DNA of 64,000 nt, from positions 620,001 to 684,000 of the forward strand of contig MU008155.1 of the NCBI GenBank assembly GCA_010909165.1, in the 5' to 3' direction. Both the position numbers and the translations under genes were made by a program. Origin of the DNA: Anthoceros angustus. Taxonomy: Eukaryota > Plantae > Anthocerotophyta. The first letter of the stretch is position 1; each line of letters opens with the position of its first letter. Below, one piece after another: positions 7,801 to 44,438 of the stretch. The notes beneath the pieces were generated by a model. That model made no database searches, had not been told where the DNA came from, and saw only the letters and a list, made by a program, of their open reading frames with translations.

Positions 7801-8799
7801 GAATTCGGAACCCTAATCTCGGCCAACAAATGCCGAATGCACTAGCAAGGCCATCGCCCCAGGCCCCACATTATGGGGGACCACACCCCCGCCCATACTT
7901 GGACCTCAACACAGCAACCCCCACCAAACTGCAGTGCATGTAAATGACTTGGTACACTCTCCAACTTGTTCCTCAAAGTTTAGCCGATATCCATCCTCCA
8001 TCGACACTGGCAAGAGTGGAATTGGACAGTGCAACGGACCGATCTCGCTATGGCATGGGAGAATCAAGCATGTAAGATGGTTAGGTGGTAGGTTCCACAT
8101 GCTTTGGAAAGCGTGACGTTAATTTGTGTGGAGATTTAGGCCATGCTTGAAATGAGAAACAATTATCTACATACAAGCTTTCCTGTGGACCCGACATGGC
8201 TGTCGGGAGGATTTCAGCACTTACCTTCTTGTATTTCTCTCTAATAGCACTCAATGTCTCCAAGGAAGTTTCGGCTTCATATATGTTGAAAAATTTCGAA
8301 CAAAGCTGACATCCTTTTCTATCGCTAAGCTCGATGTAATTTGAACTCCACTGTGTACAATGCATGAGGCGGCAGAAACATGATGGTGCAACATCCATGG
8401 GATCTTGGCTCCTGACTTGCAACCTTGGTTGGCAAGGTAAAAGATGATGATGAAAAGATTATCCACGTCGACAATTATGGCAGAGGTCTGATTGATCTAA
8501 ATTGGTGCTGCCACTCCATGCACGGTTTAGGGTTTAGGATCAACGCCTCGCAGCTTATACTCAAACAAGTGAAACCAGTGCAATTCCAACATTACCAACA
8601 TCTAAAACCAATATTACCAACATTCCTATCACCGGGGCCATGCATTACGACTTCGACGACGGGTCCTACCTTTGCGTTCAACCAATGCTTTTTTCTCCAG
8701 CCTTACCGATATGGCGGCACGAAGACTTCCATCTACCCCTCCTCCTCCCACCCCCAAGGGGAACAACCCAACAAAGGGCCCATGCCAAGGGACTAACCC

Positions 8800-32470: not shown

Positions 32471-34728
32471 CTTGTACTGAAATGGGGACATGCATGAGTA
32501 TCCAAAAACCCTAAACCCCAGACCACGTAGTAATTAGCACTCGTTTCTTGAGGGGTTTTGAGTTTACACGATTCTTTTGCATTTAAAGCTTTTTTTTCTC
32601 AATAGTGTAGCTCGCAGAATTCTTCACCACAAACAAGTGTGATATAAAAATTTTGCACAATGTTGAAGAACATAGTCAAAAGACTCCATTTCAGTGGCTT
32701 AAGGATGGACCCCTATGTGATCTCTATCCTTTGGAACAGCATAGAAACAGCTTGTTGGTATGGCGGATTTTTCTAGGCACAGTAGCATTTTGTGGCCCCA
32801 ACCATTTTACATCTTTTGATGCATTCCAAGGTTTGAACCGCTTTCTATATGCTCTAATATGAGGCTAAAAAAGCACCCAGCCATAGCGCAAAGTTCTAAT
32901 ACTAGGCTATAAAAGCACCAAGCCATAGCTCCAAGTATCCTAACCATGAGCCAACCCTACTTGTGTGCGTGTCTCCCACTCAACCACACTAGCTCTCCGC
33001 TAGGATGGTTGTGTGGAGCGAATTTAAAGAAGTGTTATAATTATTCTTTTGAACCTAAACTACAAATTCAAATACAATGTTTGAATTATATTCCTTGAAA
33101 TAGTGCCTCCACGGAAGACTTGACTAGTAGGTCCCCGTGGTGTGGGGAAAGTTTTTTCGGAGTTCTTGAATCAAGGGGAGATCATGTTGGATCAGGGTCA
33201 AGGGCATATGCATGATGGATCAGGGTCAAAGGGGGATATTAATTATGCTAGATTTGAGTTAAGAGGGAAGAATTCTCAAAGGACTTCCTTGCCAACAAAA
33301 GTACTTATATGAAATTGTGGCTCTTGTCCAAGTTGAGAGCAGCAGGAGACCAGAACAAAGGCTACGTAGGCTTGAGGATTCCGTAGGTGCTTGCCCAACA
33401 TTGCTTATAAAGATTGTGATCTAGCAATTTCTCAGTGTAGGATGACGTCCTTGTTAACTTGGTTGAGAAATAAGAGGTACAAAAGAAGGGGTTGTTAATC
33501 GGGCAAGCAATGGAGTATGTGATTTCGTTGGTGGAAAACTTTGGGGCATTAGAGATGTTTTCCTTGTATGATGTGATACCCTATTTTCACGACTCTTTGA
33601 TTCCTTGATTCGATTCATCTATGTCAACCTCCCTACTTCGGACTACACTTCAGTGTCATGCATGAACCTTCAACAACTTTGGGAACTTTTTCATTTCCAA
33701 CATCTCGTTCTCTACCCTTTCATATTATCGTTTTTGAAGATTTTCAATGTTTTCAATGGGTCTCAACGTACTTCCTGCACTCCAACCTCTTTCTTTTACT
33801 TCCAAGACTTTACCACATGCCCTTGCACCTCCAATTTCAAGTTCAGACACTTATATAGTATCCACTAGGAATACCTCATCACTTGCAGAGGATTGTGTAC
33901 ATGTAGATTGTTAAATCCAATCAGGAGTGATTTCGATAAGGTATATTGCTTATGAACATTTTTTGTGTTGTTGCTTATAAACATTTTTTGTGTTGCTGCT
34001 TATAAATATTTTTCAATGTCACGTTGTGATTGGCTGCATACATGTGGTAGGGAGTGTTGGTATCCATCCACTGACAACTACGAGTAATAGCCCACATCCT
34101 CAATGTGCCTGCACATCTATATTGCTTAGAGAGTATGACATCCATGAGTCAAACCGTGATATCGATGTGGGCCTTTTTTACTACAACGTTTATTAAACTC
34201 AAATAGGCTTTGAATCTGGCACTACCTCCAACTAGCTTTCTTTGTCCTAAAATGATTCATAAGCTCCCAATGCTAGCTCTTTCATATTCCATGAGTTATA
34301 TGAAAGGGCCAATCTCTCCAATTACCTTCGTTTTTTTAGGTTATCTGGGGATCTGGTGGTCTGTTCCAATTGCGCCTTGTTACCGGAAGAGTTGGTTGGT
34401 TGGTTGATACTTCACCACAGTCTCTGCCAAGATTGCGGTTGGGAAGCTGCAGATACAATCAAAGCTGCTAAAATTTATCTGCAGATAGATTTTGTACAAT
34501 AAAATGACCTGTAGACGAATCCTATTACATATTGGAGAAGCCTTCAAAGCTGTGCCAAATTTTCGTGGAAACGACAGACAATGGCCGATCTTTTCAACAT
34601 TTCCACACCTTACAGCTCTCCTCTCCTCCGAAGAACTCAGACAGTTTCGTTCTTAGGGGCTACTTTTTTTCTGGCTTTACTCTGGATGACAACCCAGAGG
34701 TCAAAATCTCCAAGCTCGATTGCTATAC

Positions 34729-37700
34729 TCAAATCGATGACGATCCGACTTTGTACATTTGCTCTTTAACGTATTCCAGCCAGTCAGCGACGTGGTCAGG
34801 GCGAGTTCCCAGACCCACTTTCACAATGAACTTGGCGATATCAGCAATCAATTTAGGCGCCACCTCCTGCCCACACCGAATCCAAGCACGCACAATGAGC
34901 GATTCACTATTAAAGACTGCAGATAAAGACAGTAATCAGCACGACATACCGTCATGTCCGAGAAGGCTGGAAAGAGCATGCCCGAAGCGAGTCGAGCTTC
35001 CGGAGTTTCCTGGGCCAGAGACTCAGCCGTTTCCAAAAAGACCTCATCGGTGATCGACTGACATTTCGTGAGCACCGCTGCCATACCAATCGGCCCGAAA
35101 ATGTTCAAAGCAGTCAAGGATCAGCATTCTTCGGCCCACCATCACTACAGTCAGGCATTCCAAAGGAGAGCACAAGAAAACCATGCGAATTGAAATAGAA
35201 GGATATGTAAGCATTGTTCGCTTGGGCGGGGAACAGTGTTCTCTCGTCGTTCGTAGTGTACGGAGGGAACGGACTGCCACTGGCGAACACCACACGCCCG
35301 GAAGTATGGCGGTAAGCCTCCTGGAATGTGCACTCCGACTTGGATGTGGGGTTGGAAAGCGGAAAAATGATGGGATGGTCGTTGATGGATGCCATCTCAC
35401 TGAGCACCTCTTGAGTGAAAGCACCGGTCATGGTGGAGACCCCAATCAGCATTGTGGGCCTGCTAGATGTTACGGGAGATGGTTAAAATTTCCTGAGAGC
35501 ATCTCAACATGAGGGAAGGCCAAGCAAGCGGTACGTACTTGAGAGCTTTCACAGCGGAAAGCAAGTCAGGCTGGAAGGGCACATCGTGCGCGAAGAGAAG
35601 CTTGTGATGCTGCAGGTCCTTCCGGGATTGACAAACGAGACCCTTGGAGTCGATGTAGTAGCAAGCCTTGACTGCTTCTTCATATGGGACACCACACCGT
35701 TTGTGAACAGCAAGAGAGATGAGTTTCCCGATGCCAGTCCCAGCTTCTCCTGCACCTAGGAAAATAATCCTCTGGTCTTCTAGCTTCCCACCTGTCGGCA
35801 GGAGCAGAGGACGATTAAGCTTTTGTATCACCGGACATGCCTTGTCACCACAGTACGGCAGACCAGGAGCCTTACCAGTGACTCGCAGAGCGGATAAGAG
35901 GCCAGCAAGACAGATGCACGCAGTGCCTTGAATATCGTCGTTGAAACAACATTGGTTTGATTGGTACCTTTCTAGTAGCCTGAAGGCGTTCTGGTTGCCG
36001 AAGTCTTCAAACTGCAAAGCAGACCCACGGTACACGTTACCGTGGCCCACAGGATAAACGCAAGCACACGGTCTGATTTGTCCGCAAACATGAAGCGTAC
36101 CTGCAAGAGAACGTGCGGACGCCATTGACGCAAGGCTCCCATGAATTCGTCTATCAAAGAATCATAGGCAGGCCCGCGGAGACGGTGCTGCTTTAGACCC
36201 TTGTACTCTGGGTCTTCTAGAAGGCTTTTATTTTCCGTGCCGACATCGAGACACACCGGCAAGCATTTGGCTGGATCAACCCCAGCTATGACGGTGTAAA
36301 GGATGATCTTGCCTTCACTAATACCCATGCCACCAGCGCCAAGATCTACAGAAACACACCACGTTACTGTCTGGAGTTGCAAATAATAAACAAACGACAT
36401 ACCAAGGAGCAAATGAGAACCGAGTTTGTGACAATTACCTCCAAGCCCCAAAATCCGCTCCCCGTCGGTGATGACTATGACCTGAATGTCCTGATTACGC
36501 CAAGCTTTGAGCTTCTCCAAAATGTTGCCGGAATCTGCTGGGGTGAGGTACAATCCTCGAGTCTTGATCGGAAGCCGACTATACTTCTCACATGCTTCTC
36601 CGACAGTCGGTGTGTAAACGTAAGGCAAGAGCTCTTGTGCATTTTCAATGATCAACTTCCAGAAGACCTTGGGCGAATTATCCTGCAATGCGAACAGAGA
36701 ATCAGGTTAACAAACAAATGCTCACAACATAGGAAGCAAGGTCAACCACGGGAAGGAGTGCTACTGACTTGCAGGTGTCGTAAGAACAAGTATCTCTGTA
36801 TGTCGGTATACATCTGTCGTATCATTATCAGTTCCTGCAAGCTTTCATGCTGCACCTCCGGCACGGGCACCGGTGCTACCTTCACAGACAATGCTCTACC
36901 GTAAACTTTAGGCTGGTACATTTGCGTCTTGACATAATCAACCCAGTTTCGGACTCCGGCAGGTTTCTCTCCTATCCCTTCGTTCAATATAGACTCCGCC
37001 ACTCCCGCAATCAGTGTAGGAGCTAGTTGCTGCAAAGCGAACCACACAAATGATATCAGTGAGACAACGCAATCACAATGAAAGACGACATGGAAACAGT
37101 GGGGCTTCCATCACACACACTTGCTGTGGTTACCTTCATGTCAGTGAATGTGGGGAATAGCATGCCAGATTCCAGGGTGTGCTGGGGAGTCAGAGACGCA
37201 AGGATTCTGGCAGTCTCCAGGAAGGTGACATCCGTGATTTTCTTGCTTTTTGTGAGGACTGCCGCCATTCCAATGGGCCCAAAAATGTAGGCGTTGTTTG
37301 CCTGAGCTGGGAAGTAAAGCTTGCCGTCGTCGGACTTCAATCCTGGAAAGGGGCTGCCACTTGCGAACACGACCTTGCCCTTGCTCCACTTGAAGGCCTC
37401 CTCATATGTGCATTCCGACTTGGATGTCGGATTCGAGAGGGGGAAGATGATAGGCCTCTCATTGATCTTGGACATCACCTCAACCACCTCCTGCGTGAAA
37501 GCGCCAGCGATTGTCGACACACCCACCAGCATAGTGGGTTTCAACTCGATCACTGTGGCACATAGAAAACATGTGCCAGCCAGGCATGTAAGCTATAGGG
37601 GTTACGCCCACGCAGAAGGCAGGAGAGGCGGACGAAATCAAAGCACCTATGCAGGATGCATCAGGGGAGGAGAGACAAGAAAAACAACTCCTCGCAAGGC

Positions 37701-38788
37701 ACAAGCATCCGACGAGCAGCAAAAACGAGCGACAAAAGACCCTACTCGTATAGAGAAACCTGTCATTGACCTGCAGAAAGGAGGTCGGGTTGGAAGGGTA
37801 CATCATGAGCGAACGGCAACTTATGATGCTGAAGGTCAGCCCGAGTCTTGCACACCAGGCCCTTGGAATCCATGTAGAAAAGCTTGCCCAGAGCCTCCTC
37901 CAACGTGAGCGGGGCCTTAGCCGAGCCGTTGGCCTTGGCATCAGGCAGGGTCCCAGAACCTGTGAACTGCCCACCAGTGGCAGACTCATGCACCATAGCC
38001 TTGGCAATGAGCTGCCCAATCCCCGTACCAGCCTCCCCTGCACCAAGAAAAACAATCTTCTGCTCCTCCAACGGCTTCCCAGTAATCCGCAGAGCAGACA
38101 GCAAGCCCGCCAAGGAAATGCACGCAGTCCCCTGAATGTCGTCGTTGAAGCAGCACTGCACATCCACGTACTTGTCGAGCAGCCGGAAGGCATTGGTGTT
38201 CCCGAAGTCCTCAAACTGCAGAAGCAAATGCGGCTGCCACTCCCGCAACGCGCTCATGAACTCGTCCACCAGCTCGTCGTACTCGGGCCCCCTGAGCCTG
38301 CGCTGGCGCAGCCCCTTGTATGTGGGATCGTCCAGCAGCTCCTGGTTGTTGGTCCCCACGTCGATGCACACAGGCATGCACAAAGACGGGTTCACCCCGG
38401 CAATGACAGTGTAGAGCAAAATCTTGCCCTCGCTGATCCCCATGCCATTGAATCCCAGGTCCCCCAGCCCCAGAATCCGCTCCCCATCCGTCACCACCAC
38501 AACCCGCACCGTGGATTCCGGCCACTCCGTCCTGAGCTTATCAAGAATGCGCCCCTTGTCCGCCTGCGTGATCGTCAATCCGTGCGTTTTGATGGGCAGC
38601 CGGGAGTAGTTCTGGCACGCCGCCCCCACCCCGGGCGTGTACACGATCGGCAGCAGCTCCTGCGCATTGTTGATGAGCACCTTGTAGAAGAGCGACGGCG
38701 TCTTCTCCTGCAGCCGCCTCAGATACACGTACTTGTCAAGCTCGGTCACGCATTGCCGCACCCCCTCCAGAGCCGCCTGCTCCGCCAT
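34729..38788 (-). CDS. Tandem double malic enzyme (two NADP-type ME units in one ORF), 10 exons, ~1039 aa
   Basis: Exons 38788-37771, 37552-37134, 37029-36769, 36682-36439, 36345-36101, 36011-35876, 35791-35539, 35459-35207, 35102-34950, 34866-34729 sum to 3120 nt in frame. Each half has VYTP, DGERILGLGDLG, GMGISEGK, QFEDF, FNDDIQGT, GAGEAG, DSKG, LSNPTSKSEC and QANNAYIF. Confidence 0.88.
35103..35206 (-). other. U12-type (minor spliceosome) AT-AC intron
   Basis: 5' ATATCCTT, branch site TCCTTGAC (35120-35113), 3' ...TTTGAAC; removal restores ANNAY|IFGP in frame. Confidence 0.88.
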
Positions 38789-40199
38789 CTCCTCCGAGCT
38801 CCGCGACCCCGCCGCACGCCGTACGGCTGGCAGCCCTAATGCTGCAATTCTCCCCGCCTCCAAGCTCCCTCCTCCCCTGCAGCCAACCACCACCCCCCAC
38901 AAGCTCCCTCCACCGCTCGAGGCCACGCTCCCGCTCCCGCCCCCGCACACCACAGCTACCCGCAGCTCCAGCAGCTGACAAATCGAGCCGCCAGAAACCA
39001 ACCACACCTTCCCCCTCTGCAAAATCCCTTCACCACGCAAACAAACAGCTCCGATCAGCAGATCTCACAACAAAAACAATTTCCACTCCTCCCTCCCTCC
39101 CTCCTTGGAAGCATGCGCTAAAAAGCAGCAGCAATCCGTACTCCCCTCCCCGCCTCCACCAGATCCCCCCTCCCTCCCTCACTCCAACAACAAGCACTGC
39201 CCCCCACCAAATTCCCCTCTCCAACCGGGCGGGACAGGCCACCAGATCAACAAACCGGGGCCCCGTACGGACGACGCAACAAGATCAGAAGCGATGCCTT
39301 GGCGCTCCTCCACCACACGGCAACACGGGGCACCACACGCCACCCAGATTCCAACTAATCGGAAGCTGGTAGTGCGCCCTTCCCGGAGCTCGCAAATCCG
39401 ACAAGAGCAAAACCAGGAGCAGAGCAGAGAGCGGCAGACGAGGGCAGAATTGAGACGTCTCAGCGTACCGAGAGGAGGCAGCTCAGGAGCGGCAAGGAGA
39501 CGGGGCTCGGCGCGACAAGACGGAGACGGCAGTCGCACGCATTGCACTGCTCGTCCGGAGAGCTCCCGCGGCAGCTCCCGCAAATCGCACCTCCATGTCC
39601 CGGGGCTACCCCAAACTTATACTACCTACCTACCAGGCTTTCCACTTTGTTCAGGAATAAGAATAATGATAATAATTGGGCAATTGGGCGAGACTGCGAG
39701 AGATGGCATTTGTGAGAAATTCCGCCTCCCTTCCCCTCCCTCTCCTCCCGCCCGCCACGCCCCGCCCCGGACCCCGGTCCCCGGTCCCCGGTCCTGGTCC
39801 CGGCCCGCGCCCCGGAGGCGCCGCCCATTGGATGCCCGCCTTCTTGTGGCTGGTATCTCTCTTTGGACGGAATAATAATAATGAATTTCAACACGCAAAT
39901 TCGGGGTCCAAGTTCCAACCGGGGGACGGGGGACGGGCGACGCCGAGCGCCAAGTTACTGTGGCCGTGCTTATCCGGGTGACCGGGGCAGCAGGTGCCCG
40001 GGCTGCTTCCACCCCACCTTCCCCGAGGGCCAGCCTGTCACAGCTTATGCGTGCTCCGGGCATCCACTCGGTGTTCGCCCGTACCCTGCCTTGCATTACC
40101 TCCCTCAGCTCGCCCGCTGTTTCTCGAATAATGGCTCTGATTCGGTCCAGACCTGCCTTCCCAAAATGCACATAATTCTTGCGTGTCGGGCCATCCGCT

Positions 40200-42995: not shown

Positions 42996-44438
42996 ATGGT
43001 GAAGATATGCTGCATTGGTGCTGGATACGTCGGGGGCCCGACGATGGCTATGATTGCTTACAAGTGCCCTGACATTGAAGTCAACGTTGTCGACATTTCG
43101 AAGCCGAGAATAGCTGCCTGGAACAGCGATGAGCTTCCCATCTACGAGCCGGGCCTTGATGAAGTGGTCAAGGCCTGCAGGGGAAAGAACCTTATCTTCA
43201 GCAGCGATGTGGAGAAGTACGTTGCCGAGGCCGACATCATATTTGTGTCCGTCAACACTCCGACCAAAACCAGAGGTCTGGGAGCTGGCAAAGCGGCAGA
43301 TCTGACCTACTGGGAGAGTGCTGCTCGCATGATCGCGGATGTTTCCCAGTCGGACAAGATTGTTGTGGAGAAGTCCACTGTCCCGGTGAAAACAGCGGAG
43401 GCCATTGAGAAGATCTTGACTCACAGCAACAAGGGCATCAACTTCCAGATTTTGTCCAACCCTGAGTTCCTGGCAGAAGGGACTGCTATTGAGGACTTGC
43501 AGAAGCCTGACCGGGTGTTGATCGGTGGACGGCCAACACCGGAGGGCCAAAAGGCTGTTGCTGCTCTCAAGGCGGTCTATGCTCACTGGGTGCCGGAAGA
43601 CCGCATTATCACTACAAATTTGTGGTCTGCAGAACTCTCCAAGCTTGCGGCCAATGCTTTCTTGGCGCAGAGGATCTCCTCTATCAATGCCATGTCTGCC
43701 CTCTGCGAGGCTACCGGTGCAGATGTTTCGGAAGTGGCGTACGCTATCGGCAAGGATACTCGTATTGGATCACGCTTTTTGAGTTCCAGTGTGGGATTTG
43801 GCGGTTCCTGCTTCCAGAAGGACATCCTCAATCTTGTATACATCTGTGAGTGCAACGGGCTGACGGAGGTCGCTAACTATTGGAAGCAGGTGGTGCAGAT
43901 CAACGATTATCAGAAGTCTCGCTTTGTGAAGCGCGTGGTGTCATCCATGTTCAATACAGTCTCGGGCAAGAAGGTGGCTGTCTTCGGCTTTGCCTTCAAG
44001 AAAGACACTGGTGACACACGAGAAACACCTGCCATCGACGTGTGCCAGGGTTTGATTGGAGACAAGGCCAAACTTAGCATTTACGATCCCCAGGTCACTG
44101 AAGAACAGATCAAAAAGGATCTGACAATGAGCAAGTTTGACTGGGACCATCCTCAGCACTTACAGCCTGAGACCCCTGCTGCTCTCGAGCATGTTCTGGT
44201 CGAGAAGGATGCTTATGCTGCTGCTGACAAAGCGCATGGCATTTGCATCATCACCGAATGGGATGAATTCAAGACCCTTGACTATCAGAAAATATACGAC
44301 AACATGGAGAAGCCAGCATTTATCTTTGATGGCCGGAACCTTCTCAACGTGGAGGCATTGAGAAAGATCGGGTTTATTGTCTTCTCCATTGGAAAGCCTC
44401 TTGATGCTTTCGTGAAGGACTTGCCAGCATCCACATGA
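42996..44438 (+). CDS. UGD: UDP-glucose 6-dehydrogenase
   Basis: 480-aa intronless CDS: [46 protein letters not shown]; probable 5'-UTR intron ~42610-42962, as in other plant UGD genes. Confidence 0.97.

What the first reader, a model, noticed from the sequence alone, without database searches (positions are those of the whole stretch)
34729..38788. Head-to-tail fusion of two complete malic enzymes in one gene
Seen: exon 37029-36769 carries the C-terminus of unit 1 (WVDYVKTQMYQP) and, with no stop, a ~20-aa linker (KVYGRALSVKVAPVPVPEVQHES) plus the start of unit 2 (IRQMYTDIQRYLFLRHLQ, equivalent to VRQCVTELDKYVYLRRLQ). Ten exons give 3120 nt in frame. Both units retain the catalytic Tyr (VYTP), Arg (GERILG), Lys (EGK), metal ligands (FEDF, FNDD), GAGEAG, and the DSKG plus downstream Lys associated with NADP preference. 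Established: MEs are dimers of dimers of ~60-kDa single-unit chains, plant mitochondrial NAD-ME forms alpha/beta heteromers from separate genes, and the known fusion MaeB is ME-PTA. I know of no described ME-ME fusion. Inference: a covalent pseudo-heterodimer with two diverged active sites. The CCFNDDIQGTAC motif also resembles algal rather than canonical plant NADP-ME. If the host is a hornwort, a role in malate decarboxylation for its CO2-concentrating mechanism is a speculative possibility.
Basis: partly seen in the sequence, partly recalled or inferred. Interest (0 to 1): 0.9.

Follow-up and report, generated by a model that had tools for sequence, protein, structure and literature searches.

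The report
Two malic enzymes fused in one gene
This hornwort gene really does encode two complete malic enzymes joined head to tail in one protein chain, and the same fusion is conserved from stonewort algae to liverworts, yet I found no paper describing it.

Summary
On the minus strand, ten exons (38788-34729) give a 3120-nt open frame for a 1039-aa protein. It has two complete malic-enzyme (ME) units that are 63% identical, joined by about 20 residues inside one exon (37029-36769).

A 3940-nt RNA contig identical to the window, and contigs from three related species, have all nine introns removed exactly as modelled and run through the junction exon. So a fused mRNA exists.

The fusion is not peculiar to this genome. 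Two-unit orthologues occur in another hornwort, liverworts (Marchantia, Riccia, Calypogeia), Netrium and Chara. Unit 1 sequences and unit 2 sequences form separate supported clades, so one duplication and fusion predates the Chara/land-plant split.

Both units keep every catalytic and NADP-type motif and are under strong purifying selection (dN/dS 0.03-0.07). Only three positions differ consistently between unit types, so "two diverged active sites" is not supported.

The linker is predicted to be flexible, yet it is nearly identical between hornworts and liverworts.

Marchantia and Riccia annotations split the gene in two. In Marchantia the break falls at an unrecognised AT-AC (U12) intron.

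I found no paper describing a natural ME-ME fusion. A role in the CO2-concentrating mechanism is untested.

The parts
34300..39028 (-). Transcribed region covered by one spliced RNA contig. The contig runs about 118 nt beyond 34300, which was the edge of the stretch laid, and has 28 unmatched nt upstream of 39028.
   Evidence: run X1, record 1, 3940 nt. It has 0 mismatches in all coding pieces, and 1 mismatch plus 5 inserted nt in the 5' UTR.
37771..38788 (-). Exon 1 (ATG at 38788-38786), residues 1-339 plus one base. It holds unit 1's malic N-terminal domain and the first part of the NAD(P)-binding domain.
   Evidence: PF00390 1.2e-67; PF03949 2.6e-22; aligns to human ME1 7x11 from residue 66.
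37916..37984 (-). Insert specific to unit 1 (residues 269-291) between GAGEAG and DSKG. It is low in complexity, has no counterpart in human ME1 or in unit 2, and is less constrained than the rest.
   Evidence: gap in the alignment to ME1; dN/dS 0.11 against 0.03-0.07 elsewhere; 4-aa length difference in L002.
37134..37552 (-). Exon 2, unit 1 NAD(P)-binding domain (SNPT, AQANN).
   Evidence: (PF03949 2.6e-49).
36769..37029 (-). Exon 3, the junction exon: C-terminal helices of unit 1, the linker, and the first helix of unit 2, in one frame without a stop.
   Evidence: One search shows it spliced on both sides in X1, X2, X6 and X7. The homologous exon is present in L002 and in Marchantia L003.
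36844..36912 (-). Linker, residues 519-541 (PKVYGRALSVKVAPVPVPEVQHE).
   Evidence: nearly identical in hornworts, Marchantia A and Calypogeia, but variable in Chara and Netrium; the equivalent residues 500-518 of the modelled orthologue have pLDDT 30-34.
36439..36682 (-). Exon 4, unit 2 (VYTP Tyr, GERILG Arg).
   Evidence: (PF00390 1.9e-24).
36101..36345 (-). Exon 5, unit 2 (GLGDLG, GISEGK Lys).
35876..36011 (-). Exon 6, unit 2 (FEDF and FNDD metal ligands).
35539..35791 (-). Exon 7, unit 2 (GAGEAG, DSKG, Lys of HHK).
   Evidence: (PF03949 3.2e-16).
35207..35459 (-). Exon 8, unit 2 (SNPT, AQANN).
   Evidence: (PF03949 3.7e-33).
35103..35206 (-). Intron 8, a U12-type AT-AC intron. The 5' splice site is ATATCCTT, the branch-site-like TCCTTGAC ends 10 nt before the 3' end, and the last two bases are AC.
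   Evidence: sequence. (joint 35100>35205, 104 nt skipped, 4-nt ambiguity, in all four runs). The same intron is in L002, in both units of Marchantia, and in Chara unit 2.
34950..35102 (-). Exon 9, unit 2.
34729..34866 (-). Exon 10, the C-terminus of unit 2, with the TGA stop at 34731-34729.

Best explanation
This is one nuclear gene of a hornwort. It is transcribed and spliced into one mRNA and encodes a 1039-aa (about 113-kDa) protein made of two complete malic-enzyme units. Both units look catalytically competent and NADP-type. They are joined by a flexible linker of about 20 residues. The gene belongs to an old streptophyte family. An algal-type ME gene of about 520 codons, already carrying an AT-AC intron, was duplicated in tandem. 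The upstream stop and the spacer were then lost, before the split between Charophyceae and land plants. Hornworts, liverworts, Netrium and Chara have kept both units under purifying selection. No N-terminal presequence is present, so the protein is probably cytosolic. Each unit most likely carries out the ordinary reaction (L-malate + NADP+ gives pyruvate + CO2 + NADPH, dependent on a divalent metal). The chain would act as a covalent pseudo-dimer, and two chains would rebuild the usual four-site ME assembly. Shown here: the gene structure, the fused spliced mRNA, conservation, selection, motif integrity and the fold of each unit. Inferred: that the protein is not cleaved, its quaternary arrangement, its cofactor preference, its location and its physiological role.
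For: The ten-exon, 3120-nt open frame has no stop. One 3940-nt RNA contig identical to the window, and contigs at about 95-99% identity from three related organisms, have all nine introns removed at exactly the modelled sites and are continuous through the junction exon. Pfam finds malic and Malic_M twice. All catalytic, metal, Rossmann and NADP-type motifs are present in both units of the window, L002, Calypogeia A, Netrium and Chara; Calypogeia B lacks a DSKG match in unit 1 and an AQANN match in unit 2. Unit 1 aligns to NADP-dependent human ME1, with DSKG and the downstream Lys matched. An orthologue in a second hornwort genome contig, L002, has the same ten exons, with eight exon lengths identical and the same AT-AC intron. 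Against the window its dN/dS is 0.067 for unit 1, 0.071 for the linker and 0.029 for unit 2. An independent transcriptome ORF from Nothoceros spans the junction. Two-unit orthologues exist in Calypogeia, Riccia, Netrium, Chara and Chlorokybus, and the Marchantia locus carries the same junction exon. In the tree, the unit 1 clade has support 96/94, the unit 2 clade 97/98, and all streptophyte units together 97/93, next to chlorophyte single-unit MEs. In the AlphaFold2 model of the Calypogeia orthologue, both units are confident (mean pLDDT 87) and each matches human ME1 and maize NADP-ME at TM 0.85-0.89. The protein starts 13 residues before the first conserved helix, as do the orthologues, so there is no room for a transit peptide.
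Against: There is no protein-level evidence. The chain could be cleaved at the conserved linker. The RNA evidence is assembled contigs, not single long reads, so extra shorter transcripts that start or end inside the gene cannot be excluded. The AlphaFold2 pTM of 0.56 gives no confident arrangement between the units. In Closterium the second unit has decayed, and in Chlorokybus the first unit lacks several motifs, so two active sites are not always required. dS between the two hornworts is saturated (above 1), which makes the dN/dS values approximate.
Confidence: 0.8

Rival explanations
1. Polyprotein precursor. The fused chain is translated and then cut at the conserved linker. This would give two subunits of about 57 kDa in fixed 1:1 amounts, which assemble into a hetero-oligomer like the alpha/beta NAD-ME of plant mitochondria.
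For: The linker is predicted to be disordered (pLDDT 30-34), yet it is nearly identical between hornworts and liverworts (21 of 23 residues between the window and Marchantia A). That is the pattern of a short linear motif such as a processing site.
Against: The linker is not conserved in Chara. It carries a 25-residue insert in Netrium and lacks 10 residues in the Marchantia B and Riccia paralogues. A universal cleavage site is therefore unlikely. No protease motif was recognised, and there are no protein data either way.
Confidence: 0.12
2. One unit is mainly structural or regulatory (a pseudo-enzyme partner) and only the other unit turns over substrate.
For: In Closterium the second unit has decayed to a partial malic domain. 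In Chlorokybus unit 1 is on a very long branch and lacks the Lys, DSKG, SNPT and NN motifs. So the family tolerates loss of one site.
Against: In the window and in L002, Calypogeia A, Netrium and Chara, both units keep every catalytic motif. Both units are under strong purifying selection. Only three positions differ consistently between unit types, and none lies in a catalytic motif.
Confidence: 0.06
3. These are two separate genes or mRNAs (tandem duplicates), and the continuous contig comes from read-through or from overlapping transcripts.
For: Contigs assembled from short reads cannot prove a single molecule, a caveat the tool itself states. Old annotations of Marchantia and Riccia sorocarpa list two adjacent genes.
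Against: Unit 1 has no stop codon. The junction lies inside one exon that is spliced on both sides. The open junction is conserved in hornworts, liverworts, Netrium and Chara, including complete transcriptome ORFs. The Marchantia split is explained by a missed AT-AC intron within unit 1, not at the junction.
Confidence: 0.02

Closest known systems
Chlorophyte single-unit 'NADP malic enzyme' of about 505-550 aa (e.g. Coccomyxa, Chlorella, Tetradesmus; Chlamydomonas 14g629700 and 14g629750)
   Same: These are the nearest single-unit relatives (about 55-60% identity). They have the same short N-terminus, the CCFNDDIQGTA-type motif, DSKG and Lys, and they sit next to the streptophyte units in the tree.
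   Different: They have one unit per chain. In Chlamydomonas two such genes lie side by side but separate.
Canonical eukaryotic NADP-ME (human ME1 3wja/7x11, maize C4 NADP-ME 5ou5, pigeon 1gq2)
   Same: Same fold (TM 0.85-0.89, rmsd 1.4-2.3 A per unit). Same catalytic Tyr/Arg/Lys, metal ligands and Rossmann motifs, and same NADP-type Ser and Lys.
   Different: These are single-unit homotetramers with about 52 extra N-terminal residues. In the tree they fall in a separate clade from the window's units (100/100). The window protein has two units in one chain.
Plant mitochondrial NAD-ME alpha/beta heteromer
   Same: Two diverged ME paralogues work together in one oligomer.
   Different: The subunits come from separate genes, carry mitochondrial presequences and prefer NAD. 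Here there is one gene, no presequence and NADP-type motifs.
Bacterial hybrid MaeB (ME fused to a phosphotransacetylase-like domain)
   Same: A natural fusion protein that contains an ME domain.
   Different: Its partner is a PTA-like regulatory domain and its ME part is of the small prokaryotic type. No PTA domain is found here.
Rhodomonas abbreviata (cryptophyte) 1085-aa ME-ME protein and related metatranscriptome ORFs
   Same: Same malic-Malic_M-malic-Malic_M architecture in one ORF.
   Different: It is of independent origin. Its two units are 90% identical to each other, pair with each other in the tree, and are of the canonical long-N-terminus type. It is known only from transcriptome assemblies.

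Membership tests
Malic enzyme (PF00390 + PF03949; EC 1.1.1.38-40) | Both Pfam domains score above the curated threshold, in each unit | tested here: met
   exon-wise hits in both halves (e.g. 227.7 and 168.3 bits in unit 1; 87, 59.9 and 115.4 bits in unit 2; cut-offs about 23); two stretches of each domain in the orthologues.
Malic enzyme (PF00390 + PF03949; EC 1.1.1.38-40) | Catalytic Tyr, Arg and Lys; metal ligands Glu, Asp, Asp; two GxGxxG motifs | tested here: met
   every motif is present twice; unit 1 aligns residue for residue with human ME1 across these motifs.
Malic enzyme (PF00390 + PF03949; EC 1.1.1.38-40) | ME fold | tested here: met
   on the Calypogeia orthologue (68-73% identical to the window protein), not on the window protein itself. 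TM is 0.85-0.89 to 3wja, 5ou5 and 1gq2.
Malic enzyme (PF00390 + PF03949; EC 1.1.1.38-40) | Oxidative decarboxylation of malate | not testable with these tools
   Needs an enzyme assay.
NADP-preferring ME | Ser after the conserved Asp (DSKG) and a Lys three residues before the F of FAH (Ser346 and Lys362 in pigeon numbering, from my own knowledge) | tested here: met
   DSKG and the Lys of HHK align with DSKG and the Lys of QEK in NADP-dependent human ME1; unit 2 has DSKG at 822 and HHK-LLFAH. The real cofactor preference is untested.
Canonical land-plant NADP-ME (cytosolic/plastidic clade) | Groups with angiosperm NADP-ME, and has the full-length N-terminal domain A | tested here: not met
   Brassica, Capsella and Linum form a separate 100/100 clade; residue 14 of unit 1 aligns to ME1 residue 66, so about 52 N-terminal residues are absent.
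MaeB-type hybrid ME | C-terminal phosphotransacetylase-like domain | tested here: not met
   only malic and Malic_M are found.
Streptophyte ME-ME fusion family (defined here) | Unit 1 and unit 2 each group with the same unit of other species; junction open in frame | tested here: met
   unit 1 clade 96/94, unit 2 clade 97/98; junction alignment.
U12-type AT-AC intron (intron 8) | ATATCCTT 5' splice site, TCCTTRAC-like branch site 10-15 nt before a 3' AC, and removal in RNA | tested here: met
   ATATCCTTCT ... TCCTTGAC + 10 nt ... AC; the joint is present in four runs.

The most novel reading that the evidence does not exclude
The covalent ME-ME chain could be a distinct, regulated enzyme form of streptophyte algae and bryophytes. 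Its disordered linker, almost frozen in bryophytes (GRALSVKVAPxPVPEV, with an RxxS site), would be a control element: a phosphorylation site, a docking site or a processing site. That element would set how the two units cooperate, for example by alternating-site catalysis, in a lineage-specific malate-handling task such as cytosolic pH-stat or carbon supply. Mosses and vascular plants would have lost this enzyme form.
Probability: 0.12. Interest if true: 0.75.

Novelty: new variant of a known kind. Interest (0 to 1): 0.6.

Why it matters
Malic enzyme is among the best-studied metabolic enzymes. Its oligomer state, half-of-the-sites behaviour and allostery have always been studied in assemblies of separate chains of about 60 kDa.

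A natural tandem-fused ME has been kept for hundreds of millions of years in Chara, Zygnematophyceae, liverworts and hornworts. It gives a ready-made system in which the two sites of a pair can be mutated independently.

It also shows that bryophytes and streptophyte algae carry an ME clade that I did not find in mosses or vascular plants.

There is a practical point too. The gene is split into two models in the Marchantia polymorpha annotation because an AT-AC intron was missed there, and Riccia sorocarpa also lists two adjacent models. Gene-family counts and expression analyses of ME in these model plants are affected. Marchantia and Anthoceros are transformable, so function can be tested directly.

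Tried and rejected
(1) Transhydrogenase idea. Two fused MEs of different cofactor preference could cycle malate and pyruvate, as in the synthetic two-enzyme system of PMC12492669. I rejected this as unsupported because both units carry the same NADP-type Ser and Lys.

(2) 'Two diverged active sites'. No position is fixed differently between unit types. Only three are nearly fixed (Y35/W574, H69/R608, L481/V996), and none lies in a catalytic motif.

(3) The exhaustive representative search with exon 1 listed no intact two-unit protein among its 150 best; the only long hit with any trace of a second unit was Closterium P0003, whose second unit has decayed. The other long hits were single units with other extensions. 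The fusions were found only by searching with a long query.

(4) The AlphaFold2 model gave pTM 0.56, so the geometry between the units could not be read. No coordinates or PAE were available to me.

(5) The protein atlas search added nothing beyond 'malic enzyme'.

(6) The bacterial promoter and terminator scan of the junction is irrelevant for a plant nuclear gene and I disregard it.

(7) Six literature searches found no description of an ME-ME fusion. A seventh found no U12-intron paper that mentions malic enzyme. The Chara CCM paper PMC12222935 discusses ME genes, but not g3078, g3085 or any fusion.

(8) The window protein itself could not be given to the structure or long-protein search tools, because a spliced protein has no reference and I did not paste it. 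Orthologue P0153 was used instead.

(9) The ME-ME protein of the butterfly Iphiclides (P0161) has two units that are each other's sisters and is marked partial. It is probably an independent tandem pair or a merged model, and I did not pursue it.
Full report
**Observation**

I re-read 34600-39100 on the minus strand and rebuilt the gene in a script. The ten exons are 38788-37771, 37552-37134, 37029-36769, 36682-36439, 36345-36101, 36011-35876, 35791-35539, 35459-35207, 35102-34950 and 34866-34729. They concatenate to 3120 nt, with one terminal stop, and encode 1039 aa. Eight introns are GT-AG.

Intron 8 (35206-35103) starts ATATCCTT, has TCCTTGAC ending 10 nt before its 3' end, and ends in AC. 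It is therefore a U12-type AT-AC intron.

Exon 3 (37029-36769) is the junction. It encodes residues 480-566: the end of unit 1, the linker PKVYGRALSVKVAPVPVPEVQHE (residues 519-541, 36912-36844), and the first helix of unit 2, all without a stop.

Pfam finds malic and Malic_M in both halves. The two units are 63% identical to each other.

**Is it one mRNA?**

A sequencing-run search with the junction region found RNA runs of the same organism and of related ones. Laying four of them on 34300-39300 gave the following.

- In run X1, a single 3940-nt contig is identical to the window across all coding pieces. It covers 34300-39028 with all nine introns removed exactly at the modelled sites, including the AT-AC intron (joint 35100>35205, with a 4-nt ambiguity).
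- Run X2 (organism B) has one 3412-nt contig covering 34549-38812 with the same nine joints.
- Runs X6 and X7 (organisms C and D) show the same joints in two or more contigs.
- The differences listed in unit 2 of the relatives fall largely at three-base spacing (35360, 35363, 35366 and so on), which is the pattern of synonymous change.

These are assembled contigs, so a single molecule is not strictly proven. However, unit 1 has no stop codon, and the junction lies inside an exon that is spliced on both sides.

**Relatives**

An exhaustive search with exon 1 returned three useful hits:

- a 369-aa near-orthologue fragment (P0001);
- a Chara braunii fragment (P0002) that begins with the tail of unit 1 and a recognisable linker;
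- a Closterium protein (P0003) with one intact unit and one decayed unit.

Searches with long queries then found full two-unit proteins:

| Organism | Protein(s) | Length (aa) |
|---|---|---|
| Calypogeia fissa | P0153, P0154 | 1025, 1015 |
| Netrium digitus | P0152 | 1037 |
| Chara braunii | P0151 | 1025 |
| Riccia fluitans | P0158 | 981 |
| Chlorokybus | P0157 | 1112 |
| Liverwort-like (metatranscriptome) | P0393 | 1016 |

Partial proteins that span the junction come from Nothoceros aenigmaticus (P0159, 88% identical to unit 2 of the window) and from Marchantia polymorpha (P0165, P0168). Names are; unit mapping is; the Pfam architecture is.

A third search with unit 2 alone listed only liverworts, streptophyte and chlorophyte algae and metagenomic sequences above about 50% identity. 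No moss, fern, lycophyte or seed-plant member appeared. The clade therefore seems absent from those groups, within the limits of a search that shows only the best 120 hits.

**Orthologous loci**

The genomic contig L002, from a second hornwort-like genome, carries the whole gene. My reconstruction gives the same ten exons. Exons 2-9 have identical lengths (419, 261, 244, 245, 136, 253, 253, 153). It has the same AT-AC intron, encodes 1032 aa, and is 87% identical to the window protein.

Nei-Gojobori dN/dS against the window is 0.067 for unit 1, 0.071 for the linker region and 0.029 for unit 2. dS is above 1, so these ratios are approximate, but both units are clearly constrained.

In Marchantia (L003) two annotated models of 429 and 614 aa lie 100 nt apart. 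The sequence shows that they are one gene. Unit 1 is interrupted after ...AQANNAY by an intron that begins ATATCCTTC, has CCTTAAT near its end, and ends in AC. The frame then continues VFGPIGMAAL..., which is where the second model starts. The Marchantia junction exon reads ...QMYQPKVYGRALSVKVAPTPVPEVHHEDMQELIMIRHMYTDIQRYLFLRYLQ in one frame. Riccia sorocarpa likewise has two adjacent models, locus tags 022529 and 022530.

Marchantia has the AT-AC intron at the same codon in both units, and Chara has it in unit 2. The intron therefore predates the duplication. This means the duplication copied genomic DNA, and the hornwort later lost the intron from unit 1.

**Phylogeny**

I built a maximum-likelihood tree of 50 separated units and single-unit MEs.

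- All streptophyte units except those of Chlorokybus form one clade (support 97/93), next to chlorophyte single-unit MEs.
- Inside that clade, the unit 1 sequences of Chara, Netrium, hornworts and liverworts form a clade (96/94).
- The unit 2 sequences of Netrium, hornworts and liverworts form another (97/98). Chara unit 2 sits beside it, unresolved.
- The two Chlorokybus units are unresolved, and its unit 1 is on a very long branch. An AU test does not reject placing all unit 2 sequences, Chlorokybus and Chara included, in one clade (p = 0.2).

So one duplication-fusion before the Chara/land-plant split is well supported. An origin at the base of streptophytes is possible but not shown.

Angiosperm NADP-MEs form a separate 100/100 clade.

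The cryptophyte-type proteins (JGI P0160 and P0162, with Rhodomonas abbreviata P0394 in the same cluster) have units that pair with each other in the tree. In P0394 the two units are 90% identical and of the long-N-terminus type. This is an independent ME-ME fusion, known only from transcriptome assemblies.

**Function and structure**

Unit 1 aligns to NADP-dependent human ME1 (7x11) from ME1 residue 66, across Tyr, Arg, Lys, Glu/Asp, Asp and GAGEAG. After a 23-residue insert (residues 269-291), it also aligns across DSKG and the Lys that faces the 2'-phosphate. The residue roles are from my own knowledge of the pigeon and human ME literature. About 52 N-terminal residues of ME1 have no counterpart, which is also true of the chlorophyte relatives of about 520 aa.

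Unit 2 has the same motifs. Across 17 units, no position is fixed differently between unit types and only three are nearly so. The units are not functionally differentiated in any way I could detect.

The protein begins 13 residues before the first conserved helix, as do its orthologues. A transit peptide is therefore unlikely, and a cytosolic location is my inference.

AlphaFold2 on the Calypogeia orthologue, with a 28-sequence alignment, gave mean pLDDT 87 and pTM 0.56. Residues 500-518, equivalent to window residues 522-540, scored 30-34. Both units fold confidently, the linker is modelled as flexible, and the mutual arrangement of the units is unresolved. Foldseek matches each unit to human ME1, maize and sorghum NADP-ME and pigeon ME at TM 0.85-0.89.

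**The linker**

The linker is 21 of 23 residues identical between the window and Marchantia A. It is identical between the two hornwort genomes over PKVYGRALSVKVAPVPVPEV, and close in Calypogeia. It differs in Chara, carries a 25-residue insert in Netrium, and lacks 10 residues in the Marchantia B and Riccia paralogues.

A disordered segment that is almost frozen within bryophytes suggests a short linear motif, for regulation, docking or processing. I could not test this. It keeps the polyprotein rival alive at low probability.

**Surroundings**

The 5' UTR runs to at least 39028, and the 3' UTR runs beyond 34300. The next recognisable gene is an intronless UDP-glucose dehydrogenase at 42996-44438 on the plus strand. 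No second ME gene lies in the window.

**Literature**

Six full-text searches found no description of a natural ME-ME fusion. PMC12492669 describes a synthetic pair of separate MEs used as a transhydrogenase. PMC12222935, on Chara, treats ME genes without noting a fusion. The sequences themselves are public but are named only 'malic enzyme' or 'hypothetical protein'.

**Verdict**

The gene is a member of an old, conserved and apparently undescribed streptophyte ME-ME family. It is a new variant of a well-known enzyme, not a new kind of system.

What the fusion is for, and whether the chain stays intact, remain to be shown at the bench.

Noticed in passing
window 35103-35206 (minus strand): Intron 8 of the gene is a textbook U12-type AT-AC intron (ATATCCTT ... 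TCCTTGAC ... AC), and it is removed in RNA of four species. The same intron sits at the same codon (after AQANNAY) in both units of Marchantia and in Chara unit 2. It is therefore older than the duplication and was lost from unit 1 in hornworts.
   Followed up: yes
L003 6278-12136 (Marchantia polymorpha LVLJ01000203): The public annotation splits the Marchantia orthologue into two gene models of 429 and 614 aa. The break falls at an unrecognised AT-AC intron in unit 1 (about 7826-7984). Riccia sorocarpa shows the same kind of split (R1sor_022529 and R1sor_022530).
   Followed up: partly
window 37916-37984 (minus strand): Unit 1 carries a 23-residue Gly/Ser/Ala-rich insert between GAGEAG and DSKG. 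It is absent from unit 2 and from human ME1, varies in length between hornworts, and is less constrained than the rest (dN/dS about 0.11).
   Followed up: partly
window 38828-38866: The otherwise identical RNA contig of run X1 differs from the window by one substitution and 5 inserted bases in the GC-rich 5' UTR. This is either an allele or strain difference or a small assembly error in a repetitive stretch.
   Followed up: no
window 35789-35966 and 35229-35995: Minor alternative joints appear in related species. A 176-nt skip in run X7 has depth about 25 against 98 for the normal joint. A 765-nt skip with GG..GG ends in run X6 has depth about 11. They may be a minor isoform and an artefact respectively.
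   Followed up: no
P0155, P0156, P0003 (Closterium) and P0157 (Chlorokybus): In Closterium the second unit has decayed to a partial malic domain with no Malic_M. In Chlorokybus unit 1 is highly diverged and lacks several catalytic motifs. The fused architecture can apparently persist with one dead unit.
   Followed up: partly
P0394 (Rhodomonas abbreviata), P0160, P0162: An independent ME-ME fusion of canonical long-N-terminus units, 90% identical to each other, occurs in cryptophyte transcriptomes and metatranscriptomes.
   Followed up: partly
P0223 and P0383 (Chlamydomonas reinhardtii): Two algal-type ME genes carry neighbouring locus tags, 14g629700 and 14g629750, on the same contig of chromosome 14. 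They are separate genes, i.e. a tandem pair without fusion.
   Followed up: no
window 42996-44438 (plus strand): An intronless 480-aa UDP-glucose 6-dehydrogenase ORF (three Pfam domains, E 1e-64 to 2e-30), divergently oriented to the ME-ME gene.
   Followed up: partly
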